Shown here: piece by piece, positions 1-63,121 of the stretch
How the letters are laid out: each line of letters opens with the position of its first letter
Position numbering within the stretch: the stretch's first letter is position 1
The notes under the pieces: model-generated
Database searches by the model: none
What the model was told of the DNA's origin: nothing
Seen by the model: the letters and a program-made list of their open reading frames with translations, nothing else
Made by a program: the position numbers and the translations under genes
Virus record (IMG/VR): IMGVR_UViG_3300035212_003113
Location: 248,001-312,000 of that record
Length of the DNA: 64,000 nt
Strand: one strand, 5' to 3'

Positions 1-1460
1 CAGGCCGCGGTTGACGCAGAGGCTGCTCGTGCAGCTGCCGCAGAGGCAGCTCTGGCTGACGATATTGCCGCAGAACAGGCTGCTCGTATTGCTGGTGATG
101 CAGCACTCGCCGCAGATCTTGATACTGAAGAGGCTCGCGCCCTCGCCGCAGAGGCAGATCTTGCTGCAGATATTACTGCAGAAGAGAACGCTCGCCAGGC
201 CGCAGATCTTGCTGAAACCGCTGCCCGTATTGCTGGTGACGAGAGCCTTCAGGCGGCTCTGACGAGTGAGATAAATGATCGCCTTGCCGCAGACCTTGCT
301 GTTCAGGCCGACCTGACCTCCGAGGTTAGCCGTGCTCTTGCTGCAGAAGCCGCAATTCAGGCAGAAGTTGATGCAGAAGAGGTAGCCCGTGCTGCCGGTG
401 ACGCACAGCTGACGTCTGATCTCGCTGACGAGGTTTCCCGTGCAACCGCTGCAGAGACCGCTCTCCAGGGCGAGATCGACGCAGAGGAGCTTGCTCGCGC
501 TGCTGCTGATACCGCTCTTGAGGCAGATATCGCAGCAGAAGAGGTACGCGCTCTGGCTGCGGAGGCAGCTCTACAGAGCGACCTCTCGGACGAGACCGCT
601 GCCCGCATTGCTGGTGACGCAACACTGACTGCAGACCTGTCTGCAGAAGTCGTTCGTGCAACGGCTGCAGAGGCCGGCCTACAGAGCCAGATCAGCAGCA
701 TTATCTCGAACGTGGATCCTGCGGCACTCGACTCCCTTACGGAGATCGTTGACGCATTCCAGGGTGCAGATGGTTATATTCTAGATTCGCTCGCTGCGCT
801 TTCAAGCGGCACGAACTCTGCTCTCCAGGCAGAGATTGTTCGCGCAACTGCGGCAGAAGTTGCCCTGCAGGCAGCTATCGATGCAGAGGCTGCAGCTCGC
901 GCAGCAGATGTTGACGCAGAAGAGGCCCGTGCTCTTGCGGCAGAAGTTGCCCTCCAGGCAGCCATTGATGCCGAGGCAGTAGCCCGCGCCGCTGACGTTG
1001 ATGCAGAGGAAGTTCGTGCCCTTGCTGCAGAGGCAGCACTGGCAGCCGATATTGCCACGGAAACTGCTCGTGCCACAGCGGCCGAGGCGGTTCTGACGGC
1101 AGATCTCGCTACAGAGGTTGCTCGCGCCACGGCAGCCGAAGGCGTTCTGACGTCAAATCTTAACTCCGAGATTGCTCGCGCTCTTGCTGCAGAGGATGCA
1201 CTCGACGCGGCAATCGCTGCCGAGACTGCTCGTGCAACGGCAGCAGAAGGCACGCTGACCGCCAATCTAAATAGCGAAATTATACGCGCCACGGCCGCCG
1301 AGCTGGCTCTTGATAATGCAATAGATGCAGAGGCAGCCGAGCGCGCAGCGCAGGACGGTTATCTTGCTGCAGATATTGCCGCAGAGGAGGCTCGTGCTCT
1401 GGCTGCTGAGGCCGCAGAGGCAGCTGCCCGCGCCGCCGCTGACGACGCGCTCGATGCTCG
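1..1460 (+). repeat. Degenerate 54-nt and 33-nt (18-aa and 11-aa) coding tandem repeats
   Basis: Examples: EVSRALAAEAAIQAEVDA, EEVARAAGDAQLTSDLAD, ETARATAAEAVLTADLAT, and short units such as EAAARAADVDA. Confidence 0.85.
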
Positions 1461-2439
1461 CCTTGACGGCATGGAGTCTGAGCGTAGCCAGATGGTACTG
1501 TTTGAGACGGCACCACAGGTTTATGCAGACGGTTCGCCTGGCTCGATTGATCCGATTGATGTCTCGCGTCTTCTGTTGTCGCCACCGCAGTCGCCTGTTC
1601 GCAATGGCTGGTATTTCCGCAACGCGGTAGCTAGCTCGAAGATCAACTGGTACCTGTTCGACGGTCTTGCGAATCCGGTAAAGGTCGGCAGCACGGCTGC
1701 GCCTGACCTTAATGGCTATATGGTCGTCACTGTTGACGGCAATGGTCTTTCGACCGGTCAAAACGTTCCAGTCTCTGGCCGTCCTTGGTTCTCGATGTAC
1801 GCAGGCACAAATATTGCTGCATTCCTGAATCGCGTAACCTTCCAGGTTCCATCGACAACCTCTCTCCCGGCCAAGACAAAGGTGATTCTTTACTTTGGTC
1901 AGGATCCGGGTGCCACGGTATATCCCGCCGATCAGACTCTGCAGCGCATTGCAATGACCTCTGTTTCTACCTCGGGTTCGCCTACGGCCGGAACGCAGGT
2001 GTTCTCTGTGGCAATAAACACGAATAGCGCCTCATCTGTTGATGCGGTCAAGATGGCTGTGGAGACGGCCGGCTTCTGGTCGTCCCCGGCTTCGCCGACG
2101 GCGACTAGCACCCGCTTCCACCGCCAGCTTTCGCTGCAGATTTCGGATCGCGTCACCCCGATCCAGTCTGTTTCGGTAAACAGCGACGTTCTCTGGCTGA
2201 CTGATGTTGTATTGGCGAATGCAACGTCCTCTACCCTGACCGTAACGCTGCCGCATGCAGCAATGCATAATGGTCGCCAGATCACGGTAAAGAAGACAGA
2301 CAGCAGTGCCAACAAGGTAATTGTAAAAGCTGTCTCTGGTACGATTGACGGAACTGCTGCCAGCACCGGCAAGCAGATTTTCCTGCAGTACGAGTCGCTC
2401 ACGGTCGTCTCAGACGGCTCGAACTGGCACGTACTCTGA
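1..2439 (+). CDS. Long Ala-rich coiled-coil fibre protein, 5'-truncated, with a globular middle domain and a small C-terminal beta domain
   Basis: Frame 1 is open from base 1 to the TGA at 2437-2439, so the track's start at 712 is only an internal GTG. It has about 25 E-x-x-(A)R-x-x-A-[ED] repeats of 18 or 11 aa, a DPAALDSLTEIVDAF motif, and a C-terminal VTLP..GRQITVKKTD..TIDG..YESLTVVSDGSNW domain typical of phage fibres. Confidence 0.8.
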   Translation, partial: QAAVDAEAARAAAAEAALADDIAAEQAARIAGDAALAADLDTEEARALAAEADLAADITAEENARQAADLAETAARIAGDESLQAALTSEINDRLAADLAVQADLTSEVSRALAAEAAIQAEVDAEEVARAAGDAQLTSDLADEVSRATAAETALQGEIDAEELARAAADTALEADIAAEEVRALAAEAALQSDLSDETAARIAGDATLTADLSAEVVRATAAEAGLQSQISSIISNVDPAALDSLTEIVDAFQGADGYILDSLAALSSGTNSALQAEIVRATAAEVALQAAIDAEAAARAADVDAEEARALAAEVALQAAIDAEAVARAADVDAEEVRALAAEAALAADIATETARATAAEAVLTADLATEVARATAAEGVLTSNLNSEIARALAAEDALDAAIAAETARATAAEGTLTANLNSEIIRATAAELALDNAIDAEAAERAAQDGYLAADIAAEEARALAAEAAEAAARAAADDALDARLDGMESERSQMVLFETAPQVYADGSPGSIDPIDVSRLLLSPPQSPVRNGWYFRNAVASSKINWYLFDGLANPVKVGSTAAPDLNGYMVVTVDGNGLSTGQNVPVSGRPWFSMYAGTNIAAFLNRVTFQVPSTTSLPAKTKVILYFGQDPGATVYPADQTLQRIAMTSVSTSGSPTAGTQVFSVAINTNSASSVDAVKMAVETAGFWSSPASPTATSTRFHRQLSLQISDRVTPIQSVSVNSDVLWLTDVVLANATSSTLTVTLPHAAMHNGRQITVKKTDSSANKVIVKAVSGTIDGTAASTGKQIFLQYESLTVVSDGSNWHVL

Positions 2440-2521: not shown

Positions 2522-3808
2522 ATGACATTCCGCCCACACTCAGACAAGCTAAAGGCCCAGGATAGTAATCAGGTCATTAGCATTCCCAGCCTGCCAGAAG
2601 GGCGCGTACTAGTAAGAGCTGGAAGGATAATTTCAACAATCCTTGTTGGTCCAGATCAGATAGCTTTAAGCGGATTTCCGCTGCCTACCAGTGATACCCA
2701 GCTGTCTACAAAGCAGTACGTAGACGACGCAATATCTGACGCAATCGAGGGCACTATACTCGATGATATTGCATTCCTAAAGCTGGACGGCACACGTCCA
2801 ATGATGGGCGATTTAAATCTTGATGGATACAGGTTAAAGAATCTTCAGAATCCTGTAGAGATGCAGGATGCGGCGACAAAGTACTACGTAGAGACATTTG
2901 CCACCAATCGCCACCTAAGCAATCTTTGTCCCGGCACTGCGGTGAATCAGTGGCTTATTCCGGATGCAAATCTGACTCAGTCACTTGGTGCTCAGCAGGG
3001 CACATATGGTTCTGAGACGCCTAAGAACTGGGCAGCAGTATTTTCGCATGAATTTATTTCAGCTGGCACTGATCAGCTATATCTGGCATCGTGCTCTCCG
3101 GACATGGAGCCGGACTCTGCCGGCAGAGACGTCGTAATTACTGCAGACGGAGCAGGACTACTGGCCGGCACGGATGGTGGCGACATCAGACTGGAGACGG
3201 CAGCCGTATCCGGAGGCGGTGTTCGCGGTTCAGTGTTGCTTAATGCGGCCCGGCTTGATCTTAACCTTGTTAAGATAACAAGTCTTGCAAATCCGACCGA
3301 TCCAAAGGACGCTGCCAATAAAGAGTACGTAGATGACAAGATAGATTCTATGATGGCTGCCTCTGTGTCAGAGGGAGTCCTCAGTATATATGCTCCAGAC
3401 GGTTACACCGGTTCGATTTCTATATTCGGAAGTCAGCTAAGCCTAAATGGCGCGCCAATAACAAATGTGGCCGCTCCTACTGCGCCAAGCGATGTCGCAA
3501 CAAAAGAGTACGTAGATAGCCTTGCGCGGCTAAATGTCGTTACCAAGGCAGAGGACTATTTGGCTATTACGTCGGATAGGATAATTCTAGTCGACACTGC
3601 CACGAGCGATGTTAATATTGATCTTCCGTCCGCAGTCGGGCAATCTGGACTAGCAATATACATTAAAAGAATATCAGATGGCTTGAACAAGGCATACATA
3701 AATGCTCAGTTGGGTCAGACAATAGATGGTGATGGCTTTATTACGGTGCACTTGCAATGGGAGTCGCATACTCTTGTTTCTAATGGCGCAAACTGGTACG
3801 TGATGTGA
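2522..3808 (+). CDS. Fibre/collar-type structural protein with KxYVD repeats
   Basis: Repeats QLSTKQYVD, DAATKYYVE, DAANKEYVD and DVATKEYVD, each after P-x-x-x-x-D-like turns. It has the same C-terminal LP..IKR..TIDG..WESHTLVSNGANW domain as the upstream gene. Confidence 0.7.
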   Translation: MTFRPHSDKLKAQDSNQVISIPSLPEGRVLVRAGRIISTILVGPDQIALSGFPLPTSDTQLSTKQYVDDAISDAIEGTILDDIAFLKLDGTRPMMGDLNLDGYRLKNLQNPVEMQDAATKYYVETFATNRHLSNLCPGTAVNQWLIPDANLTQSLGAQQGTYGSETPKNWAAVFSHEFISAGTDQLYLASCSPDMEPDSAGRDVVITADGAGLLAGTDGGDIRLETAAVSGGGVRGSVLLNAARLDLNLVKITSLANPTDPKDAANKEYVDDKIDSMMAASVSEGVLSIYAPDGYTGSISIFGSQLSLNGAPITNVAAPTAPSDVATKEYVDSLARLNVVTKAEDYLAITSDRIILVDTATSDVNIDLPSAVGQSGLAIYIKRISDGLNKAYINAQLGQTIDGDGFITVHLQWESHTLVSNGANWYVM

Positions 3809-3814
3809 GGAAAA

Positions 3815-6800
3815 ATGCTGCCGATTTATACGCCCCTGCCAGAAGATGGCTATTGCGACACTCCGTATGATGGTCCAGATTTAATTCCGGGGGATGGATA
3901 CGTCGCCGCTCCAGCGCAGGCATCGTACGTCGTTCTTGCGCCATATCCAGCTCTGCCTAACGAGAGGGTTCTGCAGGCAGGAGACGGCGTAACGATCATA
4001 GATACCGGTCCAGATGGCACCGTAACAATAAGCGCCGGGCCATATGTCGGCGACATCACTGCCTCGACCCCGCTTGCCGTCACCGGTACTGATACAAAAA
4101 ACATATCCCTGACCGGCATAGTGCCTGTCCATCATGGTGGGACTGGTCACTTCTCTTATCTAGTAGGGGATCTGCTTGTAGCAGATAGCACCAATTCTTT
4201 TCAGAAGCTGCCTGCAGGGGACGACGGCTACGTTCTGATTGCATCTGGACCAGAGTCTCTGCCGACGTGGGGAAAGCTGGATATAGGCGGCTACGCAGAA
4301 GGCATTTTACCTGTGTCAAAAGGCGGCACCGGCACTGACAGCCTCGCCGCTTCTGGTATTTTAACTGTTAATTCTGCGGGGGATACGCTTGTATCTGTTA
4401 TCGGAAATACAAGTGGCCAGCACTTGGTGTGGACAGGGTCTGCATGGGAGCCGGAGGCGGTTGTAACCGGCGTTTCGGAGGTGACTGCTGCTGCACCAAT
4501 CACCTCGTCTGGCGGCACTAGTCCCGAAATAGGTCTGCAGAACAGCGGGGCGATTGCCGGCTCTTATGGCGGCGCCGCCAGTATACCAGTTATATCTGTA
4601 ACAGCAAAAGGGCTTGTATCTTCCATCACTGAGCAGGAAGCAGAGATCGATCTGACTGCAAATGTCACTGGAGTTTTGCCAGTATCAAGCGGTGGTACAA
4701 ATGCCACCGCCCTTGTTCCGCGCGGGGTGCTGCTCTCAAATCTTGACGGCTCTGCGGTTGTTTCAGTTCAAGGAATTTCAGAAGATGATCAGCTTGTGTG
4801 GGACGGCTTTGAATGGAAGCCGCGAGCATTTACGGGTCTTCTCGGTATAACAGGCATTCACCCAATAAATGTATCTGACGGTTATGTCGCCGAGGTATCG
4901 CTTGAGGATAGCGGAGTCGAAGCAGGAACATACGGTGGTACGGCAAGTTCAGCAGTTATTAGCGTAGACGCAAAGGGTATCGTTACGTCTGTTTCAAACG
5001 TTCCGATTACTGCTAGCCCAGGCGGTGTTGCAGGTGGCTCTCTAACGGGCCTATATCCAAATCCCGAGTTGCGTGACGGCTCGGTGTCCGAAGGCAAGAT
5101 CCTTGATGGAGCAGTTACTCCTCAGAAGCTCGCATCTACCGGCGTGATAGCTGGCACATATGGCAGCACAGATCCTGACTTCATTTTTTTAAATTCATTT
5201 CAGGTTAACACAAAAGGCCAGCTGACATCTGCAGAGCAGGCACCGCTTATCGCAGATGGCCTGCCTATAAAAGGCCAGGTACAGGGCATTATTGGTGCCA
5301 CTATTGCAGCATTAGCTGGAGATTTAGCCGGAGATCTGAGAGACTCTTTTGTAGTTGGCCTGGCTGGGCAAGACCTCGATCAGACGCTTCCCGGTGGCGA
5401 GGATTGGATTCTGGCGTGGGAGACCTATGATCCTGCCCCAGAAGAGCCGGATGCGCCACCTTCTGCAGATTATGATATATCGGTAGACGTTGGCCGGAAC
5501 ATGGTTTTCTCTACTTTTGGAGCAGCACTCCCGAGCTTTTCTAGAATTAGATTTGGTCTCCGCCCTGTGGAGCCGCTTGAGCCGCCAAGTCAGTTGCCAT
5601 CGCCCGTTGTTGGCGGAGTAGATTATTGGACGGTCGCAGGGAGCAGCTCTGGAAATCTAGTGGCATCAAGCCTTCAAAATGCAAAAGACGGTCATTTTAT
5701 AACATTTGCGTCAGAAGGTCTAAATGCCTACATAGAGTATTATCCGAGGACAGAGAGATCCCCTGCGATGGGTCGCTGGACCCCGAAAGATATTGCGCTC
5801 AAGCCGCTGGTTCCGGCTCCGACCGGTACCTATGGGTCCGTTGGCTCAATTCCAGTGATTACTGTAGATGATCGCGGCCGCACGACATCAGTATCCGTAA
5901 CATCTGATATCAGCGCATCACAGCTACAAGGTCATGCTATTTCGAGTGCTGCTCCCACTAACGGCCTAGCTCTTATGTGGGATGGTTATACTGATCAGTG
6001 GACTCCGTCCCCCGTCTCTCCCGCCCCGCTTTCTCCAAATCCAGAGGGCACGTACGGAGCAGGCAGCAGCATACCTGTTATAACTGTCAATGATCGTGGG
6101 CAGATAACGGCTGTCGCGCCTACCACTGTTAGCGGCGGCGACCTGGATGGGTCGTCGGGCTCAGTAAAGGTTGTTGGCCTGCAAGGAAATCCGGTCTCGT
6201 CTCTTAGTCCTGGTGGCGGACAAGTGCTGCTCTGGGACTCGACAGAGTGGATTCCGGCCACAGTCGGATCTCTTACGCCGTTTGTGCCAAGCCCTGATGG
6301 TTATTATGGCTCAAGCACAAGTGTTTCACAGATTACCGTAGATGAGTACGGCAGAATATCCGCAGTCGAGTCAGTAGCAATAGACATAAGCGGCATGCCG
6401 GTCGGGGGTCACGCCTCTGGAACGGTTGGGAATATCTCTATTTCTGTTGGAGGCGAGGTAACAGGTGATGTAGCAGATATACAGATACCGGTTGGTGGCG
6501 ACGTTGCCGGCCCGATATCTGATGCAACAGTTAGCGGTATACAGGGAGTAGGTGTTTCCGCAACCGCTCCTACTCCGGGTCAAGTTCTATATTTCAATGG
6601 CTCAGAATGGGTTCCTACTTCGACAACAGGCGGAGCACCTGTAGACTCGCAGTTTATAGTGGTATCGGCAGACGGCATTCTCGTAAACGAGCGCGTCCTG
6701 TCAGGCGGCACAAATATAACAATAACGGATAACGGCGCAGGGGCCTCACTCGAACTAGGGCTGAGTGAACTGCTTACCAGTACGACGGAGATTCCACCGG

Positions 6801-8149
6801 GTGGTGAGGCGTACGATAGACCCGGCACATACGGAGATGCAAATCGAGTCCCGCGCATAACGGTAGATATAAATGGCAGAATCACAGGAATTACGCAAGG
6901 AGTGCTGGAGTTAGGTGGCGATCTAGATGGCATAAATCTTGTTTCACCAACACCGCTGTCGCCACCAACTCTTAATCATACAACCATTATTAAGATTCAA
7001 GGTCGTACCGTAAGTGTTCCAGGGATTCCGTCACTTGGGCCCGATCCTGTCTCTGCAGACAGCGTCTTTACATGGAATGGCAGTGCCTGGGTGGCCAGGC
7101 TGGTGGATACAATACAGGGGCGCTCTGTCTCTGCAGCTGCTCCTGCTCTAGGCGACGGTCTTATGTGGGACGGCACTCAATGGGCGCCATACCAGTTGGC
7201 TGGCGCCGGAGATGTGTCCGGCCCTGATGGTGCAACAAATAACAGGATTTCGCTTTTTGATGGAGCATCCGGCAAGCTAATTAAGCAGTCGCTCGTCGGC
7301 ATAGATAGCTCGGGCAATGTCACAGGCGTTCGCACCCTGGCGGCCAGTCTTGATATATCTACTTCTGCAGATATTCATGCAGGAGCAGGTCTTTACGGAG
7401 TAACGCTTAATGTGACAGGATTGTCAACGCTTGCTTCTGTGGGCGCCTCATCAGTAACCACTGCATCGCTGACAGTAAATACTAGCGCAAACATAACGAA
7501 TGCTACGATTACAGGGACTTTTACCGGCGGCGGCACTTTCTCTGGATCTATATCTAGCGCAACAATAGGCTCATCTACTGCTGCTTCTCATGGCTCACGA
7601 CATGCCCCTGGTGGCCTTGATGCACTGGCTACTGCAGCACCACTGCATGGAATTGGCGCAGGCAATACGGAAGGCACTGCCACAAGCTTTGCTCGCAGTG
7701 ATCACGACCATACAATTCGTTCTGGCCTGACTAATCTAACAATCGGTGATATCGGAGATGGCCAATTCCTTAAGCGAGTTGACACAGAAATTGTCGGTGC
7801 CGCATCAGGTGCAGTCAAGGTATTGACGGGTAATTTTGTAGGCGAGTTGACGTCGACGCTGGACGGCAGCTCTCGCTGGTATCCGCCGAGCTTTGTACGC
7901 ATTCTTCGCGTATGGGCTTCGCTAGGCGAGTCTGCCGCAGGAGTCACTGAGTTTGATGTATTGAAAGGCAGCACGGGCACGCCAATCACTATTCTTCCTG
8001 CTCACCTGCAGATCGTTGCTGGCGAGCACAGGTCTGCGGATCTGCTGCTGTCTACCCCTGTGGATTTGAATATTTCAGAGTACATAACGATCTCTCTTGT
8101 TGCCGCAAATGGCGGAAGCAACGCAGTTGTTTTCATAGAATACGAATAA
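3815..8149 (+). CDS. Large modular Gly/Ser/Thr-rich tail-fibre-like protein (1444 aa)
   Basis: GAGG SD at about 3807. Seven G(T/S/Y)YG...IPVITVD.xGxI-type motifs, multiple L-x-W-[DN]-G-x-x-W hairpins and LPVxxGGTG repeats, all characteristic of phage fibres. Confidence 0.75.
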   Translation: MLPIYTPLPEDGYCDTPYDGPDLIPGDGYVAAPAQASYVVLAPYPALPNERVLQAGDGVTIIDTGPDGTVTISAGPYVGDITASTPLAVTGTDTKNISLTGIVPVHHGGTGHFSYLVGDLLVADSTNSFQKLPAGDDGYVLIASGPESLPTWGKLDIGGYAEGILPVSKGGTGTDSLAASGILTVNSAGDTLVSVIGNTSGQHLVWTGSAWEPEAVVTGVSEVTAAAPITSSGGTSPEIGLQNSGAIAGSYGGAASIPVISVTAKGLVSSITEQEAEIDLTANVTGVLPVSSGGTNATALVPRGVLLSNLDGSAVVSVQGISEDDQLVWDGFEWKPRAFTGLLGITGIHPINVSDGYVAEVSLEDSGVEAGTYGGTASSAVISVDAKGIVTSVSNVPITASPGGVAGGSLTGLYPNPELRDGSVSEGKILDGAVTPQKLASTGVIAGTYGSTDPDFIFLNSFQVNTKGQLTSAEQAPLIADGLPIKGQVQGIIGATIAALAGDLAGDLRDSFVVGLAGQDLDQTLPGGEDWILAWETYDPAPEEPDAPPSADYDISVDVGRNMVFSTFGAALPSFSRIRFGLRPVEPLEPPSQLPSPVVGGVDYWTVAGSSSGNLVASSLQNAKDGHFITFASEGLNAYIEYYPRTERSPAMGRWTPKDIALKPLVPAPTGTYGSVGSIPVITVDDRGRTTSVSVTSDISASQLQGHAISSAAPTNGLALMWDGYTDQWTPSPVSPAPLSPNPEGTYGAGSSIPVITVNDRGQITAVAPTTVSGGDLDGSSGSVKVVGLQGNPVSSLSPGGGQVLLWDSTEWIPATVGSLTPFVPSPDGYYGSSTSVSQITVDEYGRISAVESVAIDISGMPVGGHASGTVGNISISVGGEVTGDVADIQIPVGGDVAGPISDATVSGIQGVGVSATAPTPGQVLYFNGSEWVPTSTTGGAPVDSQFIVVSADGILVNERVLSGGTNITITDNGAGASLELGLSELLTSTTEIPPGGEAYDRPGTYGDANRVPRITVDINGRITGITQGVLELGGDLDGINLVSPTPLSPPTLNHTTIIKIQGRTVSVPGIPSLGPDPVSADSVFTWNGSAWVARLVDTIQGRSVSAAAPALGDGLMWDGTQWAPYQLAGAGDVSGPDGATNNRISLFDGASGKLIKQSLVGIDSSGNVTGVRTLAASLDISTSADIHAGAGLYGVTLNVTGLSTLASVGASSVTTASLTVNTSANITNATITGTFTGGGTFSGSISSATIGSSTAASHGSRHAPGGLDALATAAPLHGIGAGNTEGTATSFARSDHDHTIRSGLTNLTIGDIGDGQFLKRVDTEIVGAASGAVKVLTGNFVGELTSTLDGSSRWYPPSFVRILRVWASLGESAAGVTEFDVLKGSTGTPITILPAHLQIVAGEHRSADLLLSTPVDLNISEYITISLVAANGGSNAVVFIEYE

Positions 8150-54407: not shown

Positions 54408-57400
54408 ATGTTTAGAGCAACGGAAATTTCTGTACGCGGCTATGATTCTATCCAGATCGCATTTAGCGACTTCCCGTCCGATGATATAACTCCGGATAAT
54501 TTTTCAATAGTCAGCAACTTCGCGAGTGAGGCGCCGCTACAGGTCCACTCTCTGCAGATTACCAAGAAGGTAATCACGCTGTATCATTCGCTCTCCTCTC
54601 CGCTGGTCAGCTACACCCTGATAATGCAGGACACTGCTTTTCGTTCGTTCGTTTCGCAGTCAGGAGAGCCGCTGCAGATCGACGGCAGCGCTAACAAATT
54701 TATTTTCATTGGGCCAGAGTCGCCAAACGGCATACGCGACAACATGCTCGATTATCTGACAAGCGTATACGATGGCTTCGAGAACAATCTGCTGCACAAG
54801 CATGTGTCTGGTCTGGCCGAGCAGCTGCTTTCGGCACGCACTGCAATAAGACAAAAATCCAACTCCGTTTACTTGGAAGAGGTGGTCCAGGATCAGCTCA
54901 TTTCACGCGGATCTCATAATTCTGATCGTCTGCCGGACGAAGGTGCATTCCAGGTAGATCGGGTCTCTGCAAGGGTCACAGGAGATGCGCTAACCTCGTC
55001 GAGCTTTTTATTTTCAAAAGCAACCGTGGATTCTTTCTCTGCATTTCCAGAGTACAACAACCCAACGCTGTCCTCTTTTCCCAGCATACCCTACTCTCTG
55101 CAGCAGGTGGTTGCGACAGAGATAGTTTCTAATTCTGAGAGAATAAGCAACAGCTTTTCTGGGCTAACGCTGAGCCTTTCAAAAGAGAATATTACGCAAG
55201 TCATCTCTGTTGTTCTACGTAGCGGTGGGACGAGCTATCCATACGACATCACTACGTATCCGATTGGATTACTTAGCAACCGGTATGATACTGCTTTCTC
55301 GTACAGCAACCTATCTCTGCAGAGCAATCAATTTCGCCTGGATCCGGCTGCTGTCCAGTCTGGTCACATTCCAGAGCCCGTGCCGAGCGACGAATGGTAC
55401 GTAACATACGCATATAAAGACCTTGGCAGATTGCCTGATTTTGCTTCAGTGGAAGTGTACGAAGTGAAGACGCAGGTTCGCGAACGAACGCCTGCTGTAT
55501 CCAATGTCTTTTCTCTTCAGAAGTTTCCAATTGTTTGGCCTGACGGTTCGCCAGCAGCCGCAGGAGCAGTAGAATTCTTGAATCCGCTAGCATCTGGTAG
55601 CGCACCAGCATTCGGCTCGACACATCCCGCATTCTTGGATGAAATCCCGTTTGACAGACTTTTGCCTCCAGCAAATCCAGGTGAATTCGCAGTAGATTAT
55701 ACAACTGGCCAGGTTCTTGTCTACGGTGAGGCCCTCGGTGGGCTAGGTACAGGTTCTTTTCCTCCTGTTGCAAGCTACTCATACCGCAGAACGTACTCTG
55801 GCGGTACTGATTATATCGTCGACCCGGAGTCAAGTGACATTGTTGCTGCCGTTGGCCGGGGTCTTGATGGTCGCCAGGTCTATCTTGACGTCAAGCATGA
55901 ACAGGTCTATGTACCAGGCGTAGATTATGTTGCCGAGACCCATAATGAAGCTCTGAATGAGTACATAGACAATCGACTTTTTGGAAATTCACGGATACAA
56001 ACGCTGTACGCCCCTATCACTGATGTGTTTCGCGTTTTTAACGAGACTACTGGTGAAACCTATAATGTAGACTACTACAGTCGCCATGAGATCAGCATAT
56101 CCGGCTCTCAGTTACCTCGTCGCCAGAATATCTATACAGAAGGTGCCCGCTTTAAGCAAGTGCTGCGCGAAGAGCTCTATATATCGTCAATTGCACGAGA
56201 TCTTGGTGCCGAGTGCGTATTTTCAGTGAGCCTCCAGAACTTTCCTGTGATGGCAGCCAGCCTTCCACAGATAGGCTCAGCGACAAATACTTCATTTGCC
56301 CCCGACTCTGCTCTGCTACTTGCAGAATACTATTTTGATGGTGATCTTCAGTCGCTTTCAGACAACCTTGATAAACTCCAATCTGTTGGTGATTACGTCG
56401 TAGACTACAGCGCTGGAATACTATACTTCCGAGCGCCAACTGACTCGGACTTTTTCGTAGGCACTGTTAACTATTTGTGCGGGGCAATTCAACCATCTAA
56501 TTCTCAGATAACCTCTGTAGACGTAATGCGCTATTCGGCCACCCCTACCAGTGAACCACTTCGCACAGTTGATCACAGTAGCTTCACTGCCACAGAAATA
56601 ATGCCTGCAGAGCTGCTGGCCTCATCTGAGCGCTTCCTCGGAGGCAATACCGGCAATCCGGTGTTATTCGGTACTCGTCAATGGGGGCGCCTTGCAAGTT
56701 GGCAGGTAGGCAGTGACATACTACATGTCGCAGATGCGCTTTTCACTGCAGATGTAGCAGATGGCAATCATTTTGTTCAGTTTGAAGATGAATCCCAGCG
56801 TCAGATTCTACAGTATATTGCACCGACCATTGTACGGGTAGATCTTCCGTTTACCGATAACGATGCAGACGTCGCATGGGTACTTCTGGACACGGATCTT
56901 GCTGACGGATACACTGTAGCAACAACCTATGAAGCACGAGATGTTCGGGGCGTATATCTACTTAGTGAGATAAACGACCCTCTGTCGCCGGTGCCAGTTT
57001 CAGTTGCAACAAATTACTGGGACAGATCTGTTGATCGAATCTCTGGAAATCAGCTCATATTTAATAATTCGCTTGCTAAGGCGCTGCCAGTCGGATCTGC
57101 GCTTGTTATCGATTACGACTTTGGCAACCTCTTTGTTGATTATGAATTTGTTATAGATAAACTACGTGTTGATTACGAGTGGGGAGATAATCAGATCCGC
57201 TGGCTGACCGCACTACCTGTTGGCACTGACTACTACTGCACCTATCGCTATGGTGCAATGCGCCGTGAACTGCTTGAAAATTTCGCAGTAATGCTTGGCC
57301 TGCCAGAGCTGCTAAATGCAGACCTAGATATGAACCGCGAGACTATTCGCGACTTGACTAGGGCTGCGATGACAGTCTTTGCCGGCGGACCAACGCTGCG

Positions 57401-58997
57401 ATCTATGCAGCAGATGGGACAGATTCCCACGCTTATAAAGCCTACCATAAACGAGCTCACCTTTGGTGAGTGGACGCTTGGGCGAGATAATTTGTTTCCT
57501 GCGCCACCTGCTGTTGTTGGCACCACTGCATTCGGTCCTGGTCGATGGGGCTCTGGTCTTGATACTAGCTCTTGCCACATAGAGATGCCTGCTGAAAAGA
57601 TAATCAGTCATCGCAACGGTTCCTTTTTCTGCAAAATTCGACCACTGTGGGCCGGTATAAATAACAACTCCCCGTTTACCATGGATGTGGACGTTCCAGC
57701 GGACGAGATTTGGATTGGCGCTGCTGGTTTTCATCCTGATGCGGTTCCTTTTAATCTTGATCTTGATCAGGTCCAGAATGTATCGGGTCGTCCATACCAG
57801 CTGGGCTCTCGTCGCGGTTTATTTGTTTGGTTTGATCCTGATGAGAAGCGCTGGCAGGTCACATTCTGTGGCACAAGCGGAGAGACCGCAGTTGGGATAA
57901 TAGAGTCGGCCGGCAAAGCAGTATACGTTCAGGATGGATATGTAAACGCATATCTTGACACTGAGATTACTGACACCAGGACTTCCTCCGGGTCTATCAT
58001 TGAATTCTCGTTTTTGATCGATTCTGAGGATACTGGCGGCACAGAGCTTGCTAGCGAATACACTGATGAGACAGGTGCTGTTGTAGTGGACCCTATCTAT
58101 ACAGATTCACTTGTATTTGTCTCATCTGCTCCTAACTACATATTTGATACAGGTACCGAAAGACGCTCCAGGATCTCACTTTATCGGGATGAATGGGGCT
58201 ACCTTACTCTCTGTGCGATTGACGCCAGCGGACGTCGCCACTGGCGAGTTAGCGCCGATATACGGTCATGGGAGCCTGGCGACGTACACAGTGTGGGCGC
58301 GTCGTGGATGATGAACAGTCCCGAGGGCAGGGATGAGATGCACCTATTTATAGATGGACAAGAAGTACCAAATATCTATAGATTTAACAGCCCATTTGTA
58401 CCTGGCAGTCTTTTCAGGTCTGTTGCCGTGGAGCAAATGGCCGCAGCAACCCGGCCGGTAATTGCGATAGCCGATGGTATAACGGTCGATGGCTCTGATA
58501 CGGTATCTTCTGCTGGCACCGACTTCTCAGTACTCGGTATTTTACCAGGCGATACGCTAACTATTCTGGAAGATACAAATGATGGGCTAGGGAGTCCTTA
58601 TACCATTCTGGCTGTTTCTGGTGGCGAGCTAGTGCTCGACTCACCTATGACGCTGAGTCTGTCTTCGGTAAAATTTTCATTAAATTCGCAATCTTACGTG
58701 GTTACTGCTAGTAATGAATCGGGGTTTTCTGTTGCTGTTGGCGGTACGGAGTTAGTTGGGCCGACTGGGGACGAACCGCAGTACTCCATTACCCGCTCCG
58801 GCGGTAACTATATATTGACGGTTTACGATGGGCTGCAGATAGGCGATTTCATTGAAGTTCGTACTCTTGGACTATCCGTGTCCCGGGCACTTTCGATTGC
58901 CATGGTTCCTGGCGAGGGCGGAGTGCCTGCTTCCTATATACTGACAGAAGATGGCGATATACTGATCACAGAGTCGGGTGATCTAATCACATTGTAG
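54408..58997 (+). CDS. Large baseplate wedge protein (gp7/P2 I-like core) with Ig-like and LamG-like domains
   Basis: LLENFAVMLG..RETIR..GPTLRSM pattern; GSFFCKIRPLW and VHSVGASW..MHLFIDGQEV LamG-like strands; follows the J-like gene. Confidence 0.6.
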   Translation: MFRATEISVRGYDSIQIAFSDFPSDDITPDNFSIVSNFASEAPLQVHSLQITKKVITLYHSLSSPLVSYTLIMQDTAFRSFVSQSGEPLQIDGSANKFIFIGPESPNGIRDNMLDYLTSVYDGFENNLLHKHVSGLAEQLLSARTAIRQKSNSVYLEEVVQDQLISRGSHNSDRLPDEGAFQVDRVSARVTGDALTSSSFLFSKATVDSFSAFPEYNNPTLSSFPSIPYSLQQVVATEIVSNSERISNSFSGLTLSLSKENITQVISVVLRSGGTSYPYDITTYPIGLLSNRYDTAFSYSNLSLQSNQFRLDPAAVQSGHIPEPVPSDEWYVTYAYKDLGRLPDFASVEVYEVKTQVRERTPAVSNVFSLQKFPIVWPDGSPAAAGAVEFLNPLASGSAPAFGSTHPAFLDEIPFDRLLPPANPGEFAVDYTTGQVLVYGEALGGLGTGSFPPVASYSYRRTYSGGTDYIVDPESSDIVAAVGRGLDGRQVYLDVKHEQVYVPGVDYVAETHNEALNEYIDNRLFGNSRIQTLYAPITDVFRVFNETTGETYNVDYYSRHEISISGSQLPRRQNIYTEGARFKQVLREELYISSIARDLGAECVFSVSLQNFPVMAASLPQIGSATNTSFAPDSALLLAEYYFDGDLQSLSDNLDKLQSVGDYVVDYSAGILYFRAPTDSDFFVGTVNYLCGAIQPSNSQITSVDVMRYSATPTSEPLRTVDHSSFTATEIMPAELLASSERFLGGNTGNPVLFGTRQWGRLASWQVGSDILHVADALFTADVADGNHFVQFEDESQRQILQYIAPTIVRVDLPFTDNDADVAWVLLDTDLADGYTVATTYEARDVRGVYLLSEINDPLSPVPVSVATNYWDRSVDRISGNQLIFNNSLAKALPVGSALVIDYDFGNLFVDYEFVIDKLRVDYEWGDNQIRWLTALPVGTDYYCTYRYGAMRRELLENFAVMLGLPELLNADLDMNRETIRDLTRAAMTVFAGGPTLRSMQQMGQIPTLIKPTINELTFGEWTLGRDNLFPAPPAVVGTTAFGPGRWGSGLDTSSCHIEMPAEKIISHRNGSFFCKIRPLWAGINNNSPFTMDVDVPADEIWIGAAGFHPDAVPFNLDLDQVQNVSGRPYQLGSRRGLFVWFDPDEKRWQVTFCGTSGETAVGIIESAGKAVYVQDGYVNAYLDTEITDTRTSSGSIIEFSFLIDSEDTGGTELASEYTDETGAVVVDPIYTDSLVFVSSAPNYIFDTGTERRSRISLYRDEWGYLTLCAIDASGRRHWRVSADIRSWEPGDVHSVGASWMMNSPEGRDEMHLFIDGQEVPNIYRFNSPFVPGSLFRSVAVEQMAAATRPVIAIADGITVDGSDTVSSAGTDFSVLGILPGDTLTILEDTNDGLGSPYTILAVSGGELVLDSPMTLSLSSVKFSLNSQSYVVTASNESGFSVAVGGTELVGPTGDEPQYSITRSGGNYILTVYDGLQIGDFIEVRTLGLSVSRALSIAMVPGEGGVPASYILTEDGDILITESGDLITL

Positions 58998-61159: not shown

Positions 61160-63121
61160 GTGATAGGACCTAATCAATTAGCTATTCGAGCCGCGCCGCC
61201 TATTGACCTGCAGTCAATAGACTGTTATCGCGTTATTCTTGAGAAGAAAGCAGTATTCTCAGGCACTTCATTTGATTTTGGAACAGGCTCCTTTTCAGGC
61301 TCCGGGCCAATTTTTGGAACATTCGCGGCACTGCCTCAGCCATCAAACAGCATAAATGGCAAAAAACTAGTAATTACTCTGGATGGCACAAATCTGGGTA
61401 TCGGCAGTCATACGGTTACTATAACCGGAACCTCATATAGCTCGGCAACCACAGAGACGATCACCTTTGCCTCATCCGGTGTACAGCAGACTGTCGAATT
61501 CTGGAAAACAATTGATTCAATAGATATTTCGGTAGAAGTAGACGATCCAGTGTATCCAGCTGCCGCCATTCAGATTGTCGAGGCAGTACCGCTCACCCAG
61601 TCTGAAAATGATGGGATTAATGCCGAAGTCTATTCCTATGATAACGGCGTCATTACGTTCCGCATTGCAGGTACAGATAACGACTTTATACTTTCCTCTG
61701 GATATTATCTTCTTGACTATCCATCGCCTATTTCTATTCAGATGGCTGACAAAGGCCGTCTTATTATAGGCGCAGATGTCTCCGGCGTATATCGCGGTGA
61801 GGCAATTATCGAGGCACCATCTTTTTATTCTTCGACTCTAGAAGATGTGCGCATAGGCGAGAGCAGTGATATCCTTAATCAAACCCTGCTTCATAATTCT
61901 CCATTCCCTCCGGCTAAGATGCCAGAGGCGACCCTGCTCCTCGATTTTGATGAGCACGTAAAGGATATAACAGGAATCTATCCAGCATTCCTCAGTCAAT
62001 TCAAAACCGCATCCAGATCCCTGAACTCTGCCTTTGAAGATGCACTTTATGTTGATCGCAGGATCGTACTGGATAATGCTAGAGAGCTAGTAGGTCCGCG
62101 GCGTGGTACAATAGAATTTTTTCTATCGCCGCTTTTAGATACATACTATGATGAGAACGAATACAGATTCATCATGGATATTACGTCTCTTAAAAGCATT
62201 GATACCGTTAGCACAACCTCTAATACCATTATACTGCCATTTAAAGCCAGAAGCGTAAACCGCGTATACCTAAAAGGCGATGACACGCGAGAAAATCTTC
62301 TTGGACCGCGTAGTCTGCTTTCCGATGGACGTACCATTCGTCTGCCAAGCAGGCTGCCTGCTCAAAGAACAGCTGTTACCGTAGAATACACGCCAATAGA
62401 CTTCGAGGGTGATCGCATATCGCTTTATCTCGACGGCTACAACAATGTTAATTTTGCTATAACGGCCAACAATATTACTCGGGTGATCTCTAGAGAGATC
62501 GACTGGAAGCGAGACAGCTGGCATCGTATAATGGCCACTTGGGATGTTTCAAACATAGACAACTTCGACCAGATGCGGCTATTCCTTGATGGCACAGAAA
62601 ATAACATAGTTACGTGGGGCAGTCCCGGCTTTATCTGGGGGGGCGGACATGTATGGGGAACATCTGCCACAGGTGTAACCGGCAGCCAGGCCTTAATTGA
62701 CGATATAAACCTAGTTGACGAGTTCAGTGTAATAAATATTGGCTCTGATTTTTCTGGCTCGCAGCAATATTTGATGAAAATGGATAACTTAAGATTTAGC
62801 TCTATTGCTCGCCAGCCTGTGCGCATTGGTGCGCTTGATTATGACTTAGTATGGAATGACAACCTAGGTGCAGTATCTCCTGTTATACCCGATGCTTTTA
62901 CAAAAGGTTTATTTGACTTCAATCGATCTGACTCTGAGAGCGACCGCTTGGCAAATCTTATCAGCACAGAGGGCTCGCTGTATTCAATCGGCGTAGAGAT
63001 TGATGACGGATTTAACAAAATACTTTCGTCTGAGCGCAGTCGAGAGGCCCTGCTAAGCATCTATCAAAAAATAAAGCCGGCACATATGCGCCTGTTCTCA
63101 AAGTTTAAGCAAGAGATCTGA
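61160..63121 (+). CDS. Baseplate-region protein with LamG-like domains
   Basis: GAGG SD with GTG start; GTIEFFLSP..RISLYLD..SWHRIMATW..MRLFLDG..MDNLRFSS LamG pattern; ends KIKPAHMRL as in wedge-type proteins. Confidence 0.6.
   Translation: MIGPNQLAIRAAPPIDLQSIDCYRVILEKKAVFSGTSFDFGTGSFSGSGPIFGTFAALPQPSNSINGKKLVITLDGTNLGIGSHTVTITGTSYSSATTETITFASSGVQQTVEFWKTIDSIDISVEVDDPVYPAAAIQIVEAVPLTQSENDGINAEVYSYDNGVITFRIAGTDNDFILSSGYYLLDYPSPISIQMADKGRLIIGADVSGVYRGEAIIEAPSFYSSTLEDVRIGESSDILNQTLLHNSPFPPAKMPEATLLLDFDEHVKDITGIYPAFLSQFKTASRSLNSAFEDALYVDRRIVLDNARELVGPRRGTIEFFLSPLLDTYYDENEYRFIMDITSLKSIDTVSTTSNTIILPFKARSVNRVYLKGDDTRENLLGPRSLLSDGRTIRLPSRLPAQRTAVTVEYTPIDFEGDRISLYLDGYNNVNFAITANNITRVISREIDWKRDSWHRIMATWDVSNIDNFDQMRLFLDGTENNIVTWGSPGFIWGGGHVWGTSATGVTGSQALIDDINLVDEFSVINIGSDFSGSQQYLMKMDNLRFSSIARQPVRIGALDYDLVWNDNLGAVSPVIPDAFTKGLFDFNRSDSESDRLANLISTEGSLYSIGVEIDDGFNKILSSERSREALLSIYQKIKPAHMRLFSKFKQEI

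What the first reader, a model, noticed from the sequence alone, without database searches (positions are those of the whole stretch)
769..62440. A DGY tripeptide recurs 26 times across 12 virion proteins
Manual counts by gene start: 1 (2), 2522 (2), 3815 (6), 10440 (1), 12814 (4), 14822 (1), 20176 (3), 24837 (1), 32850 (2), 51206 (1), 54408 (2), 61160 (1). Contexts recur (PDGY x5, ADGY x3, DVGDGY x2, PGDGY x2) and codons vary, so any selection is on the protein. I saw none in the tube, chaperones, tape measure, hub, spike, patatin or peptidase. With eyeballed frequencies (D~6%, G~9%, Y~3%) only a few would be expected in about 20,000 residues. Inference: a shared short linear motif on exposed turns of outer virion proteins, such as a modification site (Tyr phosphorylation, glycosylation, cross-link), a binding site for a decoration protein or chaperone, or a metal site. 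I know of no described function for it.
Basis: partly seen in the sequence, partly recalled or inferred. Interest (0 to 1): 0.65.

Follow-up and report, generated by a model that had tools for sequence, protein, structure and literature searches.

The report
Tail-surface DGY motif, candidate glycosylation sequon
The tripeptide Asp-Gly-Tyr is 7 to 20 times too common on the outer tail proteins of a large group of uncultured giant phages, whose tail genes end at a sugar-transferase gene in every relative that could be checked, so it looks like an undescribed tag for decorating phage tails.

Summary
Confirmed and extended. The window (bases 248,001-312,000 of a 371,675-bp jumbo phage) holds exactly the 26 in-frame DGY listed. 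The iid expectation is 3.5 and the Markov expectation 7.1-7.9. DGY is the most over-represented tripeptide seen. DGF, NGY, DGW and the five other orders of D, G, Y are at expectation. Mixed codons and frame specificity put the selection on the protein. The excess is confined to outer tail proteins (fibres, neck FN3 protein, sheath outer domains, baseplate periphery): 46 against about 5 there, 11 against 11.4 in the rest of the genome, none in the head module. T4, RaK2, phiKZ and G lack it. It is clade-wide: 556 against 64.5 in 80 related loci (29-56% GC). Modelled sites sit at loop-to-strand junctions. Some are conserved and many turn over. Where DGY is absent, Tyr is replaced by Ser/Asp/Thr, not Phe. 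A GT4 glycosyltransferase, often a whole glycosyltransferase island, closes the tail module in 10 of 10 informative relatives. DGY is 15.7-fold enriched in the 10 kb upstream of it and 0.8-fold downstream. Best reading (inferred, about 0.4): a tyrosine O-glycosylation sequon of the tail surface. Main rival: a lineage-specific turn idiom.

The parts
1..2439 (+). 3' part of a 1003-aa tail-fibre paralog (starts before the window); DGY codons at nt 769-777 and 1354-1362
   Evidence: The first site lies in the repeat unit shared with the fibre paralogs at genome 244-250 kb and with relatives G001/G002. The second lies in a coiled-coil-like A/E/R-rich repeat.
2522..3808 (+). 428-aa tail-fibre protein; DGY at nt 2822-2830 and 3398-3406
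   Evidence: Residue 101 falls inside the match to Pfam Phage_T7_tail and several PHROG tail-fibre families. Relatives have DGY in the same motif frame.
3815..8149 (+). 1444-aa fibre-like protein; six DGY at nt 3845, 3893, 4223, 4877, 5981 and 6296 (each +8)
   Evidence: Six of its 7 GY dipeptides are DGY. In orthologs P0015 (78% identity) and P0017 (59%), three sites are kept in both, two in one, one is unique, and P0017 has four of its own. Distant domain homologs have none.
10440..11327 (+). 295-aa protein of unknown role; DGY at nt 10656-10664
   Evidence: The site is kept in the orthologs of G001 and G002.
12814..14814 (+). 666-aa neck/tail-terminator-like protein with N-terminal Ig/FN3-like domains; DGY at nt 13216, 13465, 14032 and 14068 (each +8)
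   Evidence: Conservation in 13 orthologs: residue 419 in 13/13, 407 in 11/13, 135 in 10/13, 218 in 5/13. In the model (pLDDT 84.5), D135 is the last coil residue before strand 136-140, residues 218-220 lie in the hairpin loop between strands 210-215 and 222-226, Y421 precedes strand 422-424, and 407-409 are coil at low confidence.
14822..17716 (+). 964-aa tail-fibre-like protein; DGY at nt 15059-15067
   Evidence: PHROG tail-fibre and tail-protein families match.
20176..24840 (+). 1554-aa structural protein; DGY at nt 20872, 21061 and 21241 (each +8)
   Evidence: Residue 356 is kept in the G001 ortholog fragment. Residues 233 and 294-296 have DGY at matching places in the more distant relative L056.
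24837..31007 (+). 2056-aa structural protein, N-terminus paralogous to the previous one; DGY at nt 27663-27671
32838..35411 (+). Tail sheath (857 aa from the TTG start); DGY at nt 34119-34127 and 34266-34274, both in the non-conserved middle part
   Evidence: In 84 aligned sheath homologs these two columns hold DGY in 52 and 57 sequences. All 20 DGY columns lie between reference residues 69 and 497, and none lies in the conserved C-terminal core.
51206..54403 (+). Baseplate J-like protein (1065 aa); DGY at nt 52856-52864, outside the J domain
54408..58997 (+). 1529-aa baseplate-periphery or fibre protein; DGY at nt 56904-56912 and 57933-57941
   Evidence: The context at residue 833 resembles that of the site in ORF 51206.
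61160..63121 (+). 653-aa distal tail protein; DGY at nt 62432-62440

Best explanation
SHOWN. DGY is a real motif selected at the protein level. It is confined to the externally placed tail proteins of this jumbo phage: fibres, a neck protein with Ig/FN3-like domains, the outer domains of the sheath and the baseplate periphery. The same holds across a large clade of uncultured jumbo phages. In the one modelled protein the sites lie where a loop runs into a beta-strand. A few sites are strongly conserved, while many others appear and disappear between orthologs and the number per protein is kept. At sites that lack the motif, the Tyr position holds small polar residues, as expected of a surface position.

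INFERRED. This is how a sequon behaves. I propose that DGY is the acceptor motif of a tail-specific post-translational modification, most likely O-glycosylation of the tyrosine hydroxyl. Asp at -2 would serve as the recognition determinant, and Gly at -1 would give the enzyme access at the turn. The candidate writer is the GT4-family glycosyltransferase encoded 25 nt after the last tail gene (genome 313,990-315,153, about 2 kb beyond the window's end). Its orthologs close the tail gene module in every clade genome that could be checked. In several of those genomes it is followed by more glycosyltransferases and sugar-modifying enzymes.

The enzyme would act in the cytoplasm on tail proteins made late in infection, giving the tail a sugar coat. 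What the coat does (protection, adhesion) is not addressed by any result here.
For: Enrichment and its limits:
- Window: 26 against 3.5 iid and 7.1-7.9 Markov.
- Genome tail blocks: 46 against about 5. Rest of the genome: 11 against 11.4. Head module: 0.
- The signal is specific to the coding frame.
- Strict chemistry: NGY, EGY, DGF, DGW and all other orders of D, G, Y are at expectation.
- Not a general property of phage tails: T4, RaK2, phiKZ and phage G lack it.
- Not a host-proteome bias: the other contigs of the Bacteroidia MAG hold 3 against 7.6.

Clade-wide, and independent of base composition:
- G001 12 against 1.4 and G002 23 against 2.5.
- L054 12 against 0.56 and L056 17 against 1.08.
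- A 29% GC contig holds 13 against 1.75 in its tail region.
- 80 loci around sheath homologs hold 556 against 64.5.

Sequon-like turnover:
- In 62 neck-protein homologs there are 241 DGY against 12.1, spread over 61 alignment columns. The columns used by 3 or fewer sequences still hold 72 sites, 6 times the expectation. Twenty-one control tripeptides give 0.55-1.9.
- The sheath family has 211 against 12.1 in 20 columns, all outside the conserved core.

Surface behaviour:
- The Tyr of DGY is replaced by S/D/E/T/N. Other Tyr columns go to Phe in 24-48% of replacements.
- Modelled sites lie at loop-to-strand junctions.

Writer candidate:
- The GT4 gene was found and typed.
- Orthologs lie 29-37 kb downstream of the sheath gene in 10 of 10 informative genomes.
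- In the five genomes whose GT region was read it lies beside, or up to three genes after, the ortholog of the last tail protein, and DGY nearly vanishes beyond it (one ORF with 1 and one with 2).
- In 60 loci, the 10 kb upstream of the GT hold 674 against 42.8 and the 10 kb downstream hold 23 against 28.4.
- GT2, GT47, nucleotide-sugar transferase, methyltransferase and DegT aminotransferase genes follow it in G004, G006, G007 and G008.
- No ortholog was found in the four control phages that lack the enrichment.
- Three complete genomes with GT islands lack a ThyA-type hydroxymethylase, which speaks against glycosylation of hydroxymethyl bases in DNA as the island's task.
- By NCBIfam naming, GT4 includes the cytoplasmic protein O-glycosyltransferases SdgA/SdgB and GtfA.
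- O-linkage of sugars to tyrosine is established in bacterial S-layer proteins (PMC2943079).
Against: - No modification has been observed. The link between motif and enzyme is synteny plus co-occurrence within one clade, so it is phylogenetically confounded.
- Tyrosine O-glycosylation is rare. The known bacterial cases use membrane oligosaccharyltransferases, not soluble GT4 enzymes.
- The glycosyltransferase lies at the border between the tail and replication modules. It could serve another purpose, such as DNA modification by another route or modification of the host envelope.
- This genome itself does carry a ThyA-family gene.
- The most divergent DGY-rich contig, G003:C1 (171,750 bp and possibly incomplete), has no ortholog of the GT4. 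It has only three GT2 genes at its end.
- Non-tail proteins show no avoidance of DGY (11 against 11.4).
- Some conserved columns tolerate DGF or DGV, which hints that part of the signal is structural.
Confidence: 0.4

Rival explanations
1. Lineage-specific structural idiom. An Asp-Gly turn followed by a tyrosine that starts the next beta-strand is a favoured way to build hairpins in the beta-rich tail proteins of this clade. It spread through module shuffling and parallel substitution, and no trans-acting reader is involved.
For: Modelled sites lie at loop-to-strand junctions. The residue after Tyr is V/I/L/M/F in 59% of sites, and PDG is also enriched. Several contexts are variants of known fibre frames, such as the T7-fibre N-terminal motif and a VDxxGR-type hairpin. 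At some conserved sheath columns DGY alternates with DGV, and DGF becomes common among the more distant sheath homologs. T4 and RaK2 show a mild general excess of about 2-fold over iid.
Against: Hairpin physics is universal, yet T4, RaK2, phiKZ and G show at most 1.1-1.5 times the Markov expectation. The structurally equivalent NGY, DGF and DGW are not enriched. Replacement of the Tyr by Ser/Asp/Thr rather than Phe does not fit a packing role. The motif also occurs in helical, coiled-coil-like repeats. Sites keep arising at new columns at 6 times expectation.
Confidence: 0.3
2. Non-covalent docking motif. The exposed Asp/Tyr pair is a weak binding site repeated over the tail surface. It could bind an assembly chaperone, a decoration protein or other fibres in a branched fibre network, or it could bind host surface glycans or cations during reversible adsorption.
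For: The distribution is exterior and tail-only, with many copies per protein and positional turnover. Sites are enriched in the first tenth of the proteins, including a conserved site at residue 26 (residue 30 in one) of three fibre paralogs and residues 11 and 27 of the 1444-aa fibre, which fits a role in attachment. The genome carries at least ten fibre paralogs.
Against: A three-residue motif in very different structural settings (hairpins, helices, Pro-rich N-termini) is unlikely to form one kind of binding pocket. Nearly no site lies in the last 30% of the proteins, where receptor-binding tips usually are. No partner has been identified. This reading does not explain the conserved glycosyltransferase at the end of the module.
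Confidence: 0.2
3. Artefact of composition, paralogy or multiple testing, or a DNA-level signal read through the coding frame.
For: Some sites outside and at the edge of the window are copies of the same repeat units in fibre paralogs.
Against: DGY ranks first among all tripeptides seen, and the result is significant after Bonferroni correction. It survives per-protein Markov expectations, collapsing of similar contexts and permutation controls. It was replicated in independent genomes not used to find it, from 29 to 56% GC. The nucleotide pattern is enriched only in the coding frame, and codons are mixed, including GGA and GGG.
Confidence: 0.01

Closest known systems
Glycosylation sequons, in particular the Bacteroidota general O-glycosylation motif D-(S/T)-(A/I/L/V/M/T) (my own knowledge of the literature, not looked up here)
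   Same: Both are three-residue motifs with an Asp and a hydroxyl-bearing acceptor followed by a hydrophobic residue. Both occur many times per protein at exposed sites and show positional turnover. Some relatives of this phage are binned with Bacteroidia or Bacteroidota.
   Different: Here the acceptor would be Tyr, not Ser/Thr, and Gly stands between Asp and the acceptor. The Bacteroidota system works on exported proteins outside the cytoplasm, whereas phage tail proteins are made and assembled in the cytoplasm. No glycan has been shown here.
Virion glycosylation of mycobacteriophages (Freeman et al. 2023, as summarised in PMC12619734)
   Same: Phage-encoded glycosyltransferases lie next to structural genes, and the virion surface is the proposed target.
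   Different: In mycobacteriophages the glycans sit at the C-termini of the capsid and tail-tube subunits. Here the motif is absent from the head module and the tube region and is nearly absent from the last 30% of proteins. No defined tripeptide sequon is mentioned in that summary.
SdgA/SdgB and GtfA: GT4-type cytoplasmic protein O-glycosyltransferases of Gram-positive adhesins (named by NCBIfam; mechanism from my own knowledge)
   Same: They belong to the same enzyme superfamily (GT4). They act in the cytoplasm on surface-destined proteins at short repeated motifs that pair an acidic residue with a hydroxyl residue (Ser-Asp repeats).
   Different: All matches are far below the family cut-offs and show generic GT4 similarity only. 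In those systems the acceptor is Ser in long low-complexity repeats, not a Tyr at scattered turns.
Tyrosine O-glycosylation of bacterial S-layer proteins (PMC2943079)
   Same: It shows that sugar-Tyr O-linkages exist in prokaryotes on self-assembling surface proteins, at several sites per protein.
   Different: The glycan is transferred en bloc by a membrane oligosaccharyltransferase during secretion. No consensus motif is given in the paper.
Type I turn with G1 bulge ('x-P-D-G-x' hairpins) and Asx turns (textbook structural motifs, my own knowledge)
   Same: Asp-Gly occupies the turn, often preceded by Pro/Ala/Ser/Gly, with a strand following directly.
   Different: Those motifs have no requirement for Tyr and accept Asn. 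They should be equally common in the tails of other phages, and they are not.

Membership tests
Protein glycosylation sequon | Short motif containing a chemically suitable acceptor residue | tested here: met
   Tyr is strictly required. DGF, DGW, DGH and DGV are at expectation in the window, in the 62-member neck-protein family and in the 84 closer sheath homologs. Among more distant sheath homologs DGF becomes common.
Protein glycosylation sequon | Sites on exposed parts of target proteins, with positional turnover and a maintained count | tested here: met
   61 alignment columns in one family and 20 in another. Sporadic columns hold 6 times the expectation. Polar residues replace the Tyr. 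Sheath sites lie only in the non-core region. Exposure is inferred, not measured.
Protein glycosylation sequon | A cognate transferase encoded with, or co-occurring with, the targets | tested here: inconclusive
   A GT4 gene lies at the 3' end of the tail module in G000 and in 10 of 10 informative relatives, and further GT genes follow in four of them. It is absent from four control phages. It was also not found in the DGY-rich fragment G003:C1. Its acceptor is unknown.
Protein glycosylation sequon | A covalent glycan demonstrated on the acceptor | not testable with these tools
   This needs mass spectrometry of virions or of co-expressed proteins.
Bacteroidota O-glycosylation motif D-(S/T)-(A/I/L/V/M/T) | Asp directly followed by Ser/Thr and then a hydrophobic residue, on exported proteins | tested here: not met
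   The motif is D-G-Y. The targets are cytoplasmically assembled tail proteins.
Mycobacteriophage-type virion glycosylation | Glycans at the C-termini of capsid and tail-tube subunits | tested here: not met
   There is no DGY in the head module or in the ORFs between sheath and baseplate, and nearly none in the last 30% of proteins.
Generic beta-turn motif (type I + G1 bulge, Asx turn) | Location at a turn that leads into a beta-strand | tested here: met
   In the AlphaFold2 secondary structure, three of the four sites of the 666-aa protein directly precede or open a strand. Flanking residues show a strand-like pattern.
Generic beta-turn motif (type I + G1 bulge, Asx turn) | Universal occurrence in beta-rich proteins, and tolerance of Asn for Asp and of other aromatics for Tyr | tested here: not met
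   T4, RaK2, phiKZ and G are at 1.1-1.5 times Markov or less. NGY, DGF and DGW are not enriched.
DxDxDG calcium-binding loop (EF-hand-like) | Acidic residues at -2 and -4 from the Asp of DG | tested here: not met
   Of the 26 contexts, one has Asp at -2 and one has Asp at -4. None has both.
Tyrosine phosphorylation site | A protein kinase available in the phage | tested here: not met
   There is no Pkinase (PF00069) match in the complete genome. Other kinase families and host kinases were not tested.

The most novel reading that the evidence does not exclude
DGY is the acceptor sequon of a phage-encoded, cytoplasmic protein-tyrosine O-glycosylation system. This system coats the tails (fibres, neck, sheath surface, baseplate rim) of a whole clade of environmental jumbo phages. 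The gain and loss of sites between relatives would then reflect ongoing selection on a 'glycan coat', as on the envelope proteins of animal viruses. It would be the first defined sequon for phage virion glycosylation and the first Tyr-directed soluble GT4 enzyme.
Probability: 0.35. Interest if true: 0.9.

Novelty: new variant of a known kind. Interest (0 to 1): 0.8.

Why it matters
If the motif marks a modification, it gives a sequence-level handle on phage virion glycosylation. Targets could be predicted from sequence in hundreds of uncultured jumbo phage genomes. The enzyme-substrate pair could be tested in E. coli without culturing the phage. A Tyr-directed three-residue sequon would also be a compact tag for glyco-engineering.

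Even if the motif turns out to be structural or a docking site, the signal is unusually clean. A tripeptide enriched 10- to 20-fold, limited to one functional class of proteins and to one viral clade, can be used to recognise outer tail proteins in genomes where homology searches find nothing. It also poses a clear question about what selects it.

Tried and rejected
- DNA-level motif: rejected. The pattern is frame-specific and the codons are mixed.
- Paralogy or repeat copies as the sole cause: rejected. 23 context clusters remain, and the result was replicated in non-homologous proteins and in other genomes.
- General property of phage tail proteins: rejected with T4, RaK2, phiKZ and phage G.
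- Host-proteome bias: rejected for the Bacteroidia MAG.
- Calcium-loop pattern: rejected.
- Pkinase-family protein kinase: none in the genome. GT2: none in this genome.
- Literature: no paper on a DGY motif in phages, and 'Asp-Gly-Tyr' gave only unrelated hits. One paper on Tyr glycosylation (PMC4397588) was not held.
- PDB sequence searches with the 1444-aa and 1529-aa proteins gave nothing useful. The profile hit to 'Pizza' propeller designs is a short, low-scoring repeat match that I did not interpret.
- The first structure model, from 13 sequences, was poor beyond residue 390. I repeated it with 62 sequences.
- A dipeptide-preserving shuffle script returned no answer. I replaced it with analytic per-protein expectations.
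- A single-sequence search for close relatives of the glycosyltransferase in IMG/VR found none. The alignment-based search did find them.
- Complex prediction on the glycosyltransferase with residues 1-45 of the 1444-aa fibre gave no verdict, so it is no evidence either way.
- The terminator and promoter scan around the glycosyltransferase gene was not decisive.
- The reads tools were not used. No other genetic code was needed.

Full report
WHAT THE WINDOW IS. The window is bases 248,001-312,000 of a complete 371,675-bp virus record with direct terminal repeats. All long ORFs lie on the + strand. They form the tail module of a myovirus-type jumbo phage:
- fibre paralogs (1-2439, 2522-3808, 3815-8149, 14822-17716)
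- a patatin-like phospholipase (8215-9015)
- a 666-aa protein (12814-14814) whose C-terminal domain has a neck/tail-terminator fold (phage 812 neck, Z 10.8, rmsd 4.2 over 144 residues) behind Ig- and FN3-like domains
- the sheath (32838-35411)
- a tube initiator (39325-40191), a sheath initiator (50768-51196) and a Baseplate-J protein (51206-54403)
No cultured phage is close. The best sheath match is Bacillus phage G at 29% identity over the C-terminal quarter.

THE OBSERVATION. The iid expectation is 3.48. A first-order Markov expectation is 7.13 pooled, or 7.86 when computed per protein and summed. Both Markov figures are inflated, because the DGY sites themselves add to the DG and GY counts. 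DGY is the most over-represented tripeptide seen under either model (p 1e-14 and 4e-8; about 3e-4 after Bonferroni correction for 8,000 tripeptides). The next best tripeptides have p near 1e-3. The five other orders of the same three residues occur 1-4 times each. One third of all GY dipeptides in the window are preceded by Asp, although Asp makes up 6.5% of residues.

PROTEIN LEVEL, NOT DNA LEVEL. Thirteen different 9-mers encode the 26 sites, and all four Gly codons are used. GAYGGNTAY occurs 57 times in the coding frame of the genome and 1-9 times in each of the other five frame and strand classes.

NOT EXPLAINED BY REPEAT COPIES. The genome holds a family of fibre paralogs, and some sites are copies of shared repeat units. 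These include an N-terminal site at residue 26 (30 in one) of three paralogs, a unit repeated within and between fibres, and a coiled-coil-like A/E/R-rich unit. A deliberately permissive clustering of the 33-residue contexts still leaves 23 clusters for the 31 sites of ORFs that overlap the window (p 9e-6 against the Markov expectation).

WHERE IT IS AND IS NOT. Over the whole genome the excess is confined to two blocks:
- The tail block at 235-314 kb has 39 DGY against 4.2 iid.
- A second fibre block at 142-157 kb, on the minus strand, has 7 against 0.86.
- The remaining 84,436 residues have 11 against 11.4.
The head and packaging module (terminase, portal, protease-bearing protein; 209-235 kb) has none. 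Inside the window, the ORFs between the sheath and the baseplate have none. Along the proteins, sites favour the first tenth and almost avoid the last 30%. In the sheath family all DGY columns lie between reference residues 69 and 497, outside the conserved C-terminal core. The carriers are therefore the outward-facing parts of the tail, not 'the virion' as a whole.

NOT A GENERAL PROPERTY OF PHAGE TAILS OR OF THE HOST.
- T4 has 17 against 8.2 iid and 11.2 Markov. RaK2 has 34 against 19 and 27. phiKZ has 19 against 13.7 and 18. Their proteins of 400 aa or more are at expectation.
- The tail module of phage G, the nearest cultured relative, has 3 against 2.15.
- In a Bacteroidia MAG that carries a related phage contig, the other contigs have 3 against 7.6.

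CLADE-WIDE. Every relative I could reach shows the excess.
- Two IMG/VR fragments at about 71% protein identity have 12 against 1.4 and 23 against 2.5.
- A fibre locus from ENA has 12 against 0.56, and a relative at about 51% identity has 17 against 1.08.
- A 171,750-bp contig of 29% GC has 13 against 1.75 in its tail region and about the expected number elsewhere.
- Eighty IMG/VR loci around sheath homologs (29.5-56% GC) hold 556 against 64.5, with 74 of 80 at three times expectation or more. YGD is 69 and NGY is 35.
- IMG/VR holds at least 298 sheath relatives, on contigs of up to 459 kb among the 80 kept.

CONSERVATION AND TURNOVER.
- In 13 orthologs of the 666-aa protein (50-100% identity), the window's four sites are kept in 13, 11, 10 and 5 sequences. 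Seven further columns carry DGY in some members, and each protein has 3-5.
- A profile search of 1.84 billion cluster representatives found 1,157 relatives.
- In 62 near-full-length members there are 241 DGY against 12.1 expected, in 61 alignment columns. The 50 columns used by three or fewer sequences hold 72 sites, six times the total expectation. Twenty-one control tripeptides give 0.55-1.9 by the same measure.
- The 1444-aa fibre shows the same pattern. Orthologs carry 5 and 7 DGY, of which four are unique to one. Nearly every GY in them is a DGY. Eleven distant homologs of its central domain carry none.
- Sheaths carry 2-5 each. In the block of 42 homologs at 45-53% identity, 127 of 166 GY dipeptides are DGY.

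STRUCTURAL SETTING. The 62-sequence model of the 666-aa protein has a mean pLDDT of 84.5.
- D135 is the last coil residue before strand 136-140.
- Residues 218-220 lie in the hairpin loop between strands 210-215 and 222-226.
- Y421 directly precedes strand 422-424.
- Residues 407-409 are coil in a low-confidence stretch.
Across 46 sites, the residue after Tyr is V/I/L/M/F in 59%. The residue before Asp is small in 48%. Position -4 is hydrophobic in 50%. In close orthologs that lack the motif at an aligned column, the Tyr position holds S, D, E, T or N (61-100% polar or small). Other Tyr columns are replaced mainly by Phe (39-48%). In the sheath family the figures are 5% Phe at DGY columns against 24% at other Tyr columns. 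This is the behaviour of a surface residue.

THE LEAD TO A MECHANISM. A GT4-family glycosyltransferase (387 aa; Pfam Glyco_trans_1_4 and Glycos_transf_1, both above cut-off) starts 25 nt after the last tail gene, at genome 313,990, about 2 kb beyond the window.
- Its orthologs lie 29-37 kb downstream of the sheath gene in 10 of 10 clade genomes with enough sequence. The eleventh contig ends about where the gene would be.
- In five genomes inspected in detail it follows the ortholog of the last tail protein (5-10 DGY each), either directly or after one to three other genes. Beyond it only two ORFs carry any DGY, one with 1 and one with 2.
- In 60 IMG/VR loci retrieved with the glycosyltransferase alone, the 10 kb upstream hold 674 DGY against 42.8 (15.7-fold) and the 10 kb downstream hold 23 against 28.4. 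Fifty-four loci have five or more upstream, and none has five downstream. The six loci without upstream DGY are partial matches to more distant GT4 genes.
- In G004, G006, G007 and G008 the GT4 gene is followed by GT2 genes. G006 also has a GT47-like gene, a nucleotide-sugar transferase, a methyltransferase and a DegT-type sugar aminotransferase. G004 to G006 carry a fused double GT4.
- The four control phages without the DGY excess have no ortholog.
- Three complete genomes with such islands lack any ThyA-type hydroxymethylase. This speaks against the best-known alternative task for phage glycosyltransferase clusters, glycosylation of hydroxymethylated bases. This genome does have a ThyA-family gene.

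INTERPRETATION. Several properties are those of a sequon: a strict three-residue motif with a hydroxyl acceptor, scattered over exposed turns of one class of proteins, with a maintained count and shifting positions. Its carriers end at a conserved glycosyltransferase gene. I therefore rank tyrosine O-glycosylation of the tail surface first, at about 0.4. That the motif is real and selected is near certain. Every mechanistic step is inferred.

The main rival, at about 0.3, is a lineage-specific turn idiom. It fits the loop-to-strand position and the DGV and DGF alternatives seen among sheath homologs. It does not explain the restriction to one clade, the failure of NGY and DGF to follow, or the polar replacements.

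A non-covalent docking role, at about 0.2, fits the N-terminal bias and the many fibre paralogs. It has no identified partner.

Three points count against my first choice:
- The association with the enzyme is confounded by shared ancestry.
- The DGY-rich contig G003:C1 shows no GT4 ortholog in its 171,750 bp.
- Soluble Tyr-directed glycosyltransferases are not an established class.

COMPARISON WITH WHAT IS KNOWN. I found no paper that describes the motif.
- Phage virion glycosylation is known from mycobacteriophages, but at the C-termini of capsid and tube proteins.
- Tyr-linked glycans are known from S-layers, but they are made by membrane oligosaccharyltransferases.
- GT4 protein glycosyltransferases are known for Ser-rich adhesins.
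- A recently named lineage of large aquatic phages with predicted Bacteroidota hosts has four glycosyltransferase orthogroups in its core genome (PMC12619734). I could not test whether this phage belongs to it.
I file the finding as a new variant of a known kind (protein glycosylation sequons and phage virion glycosylation). If no modification exists, the motif has no described counterpart.

Noticed in passing
window 8215-9015: A patatin-like phospholipase gene sits among the tail-fibre genes (Pfam E 5e-25). It is kept at the same place in relatives L054 and L056, which suggests a lipid-degrading enzyme linked to the tail module.
   Followed up: partly
L082:2991-4154 (genome 313,990-315,153, about 2 kb past the window end); paralog at L083:8004-9077: A GT4 glycosyltransferase starts 25 nt after the last tail gene. 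A second, divergent GT4 at 128 kb matches Pfam 'GT4-conflict'.
   Followed up: yes
L082:6858-8204 (genome 317,857-319,203): A tubulin/FtsZ-family gene with a TubZ-like C-terminal domain, followed by UvsW-like and DnaB-like helicases. The phage may position its DNA or a compartment with its own tubulin.
   Followed up: no
genome 240,099-240,935 (upstream of the window): A ThyA-family gene (E 6e-80) lies between fibre genes. It is absent from three complete relatives. I did not determine whether it is a thymidylate synthase or a hydroxymethylase.
   Followed up: no
P0008 (homolog of window 12814-14814): One homolog of the neck/FN3 protein is 1072 aa long and carries intein Pfam domains (Hint, LAGLIDADG, intein splicing). 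That is an intein in a tail structural gene.
   Followed up: no
window 12814-14814, residues 449-538: Five Cys are invariant in the 13 close orthologs (449, 465, 521, 535, 538). Four of them are nearly invariant in the 62-sequence family, next to the invariant site at 419-421. This may be a metal site. The stretches 446-456 and 466-485 are modelled at low confidence.
   Followed up: no
L082:2971-2990: An 8-bp GC-rich hairpin fills the gap between the stop of the last tail gene and the ATG of the glycosyltransferase. A second hairpin follows the glycosyltransferase stop (4192-4210).
   Followed up: no
genome 142,559-156,297 (minus strand): A second block of four ~1100-aa fibre paralogs lies about 100 kb away from the tail module on the other strand. 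Three of the four carry DGY (7 in all against 0.86 expected for the block).
   Followed up: partly
L166:7913-8815 and L166:16849-18183; L168:7801-9036: In relatives, a LAGLIDADG homing endonuclease sits between the tail genes and the glycosyltransferase. A protein made of DUF4379 treble-clef zinc-finger repeats lies inside the glycosyltransferase island.
   Followed up: no
window 31017-31694: A 225-aa protein just upstream of the sheath gene has a carboxypeptidase-regulatory-like (transthyretin-type) domain. It carries no DGY.
   Followed up: no
P0275 (sheath homolog, 463-kb contig): A sheath homolog from this phage clade is filed at NCBI under 'Candidatus Pacearchaeota archaeon'. It is probably a jumbo phage contig binned with an archaeal MAG.
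   Followed up: no
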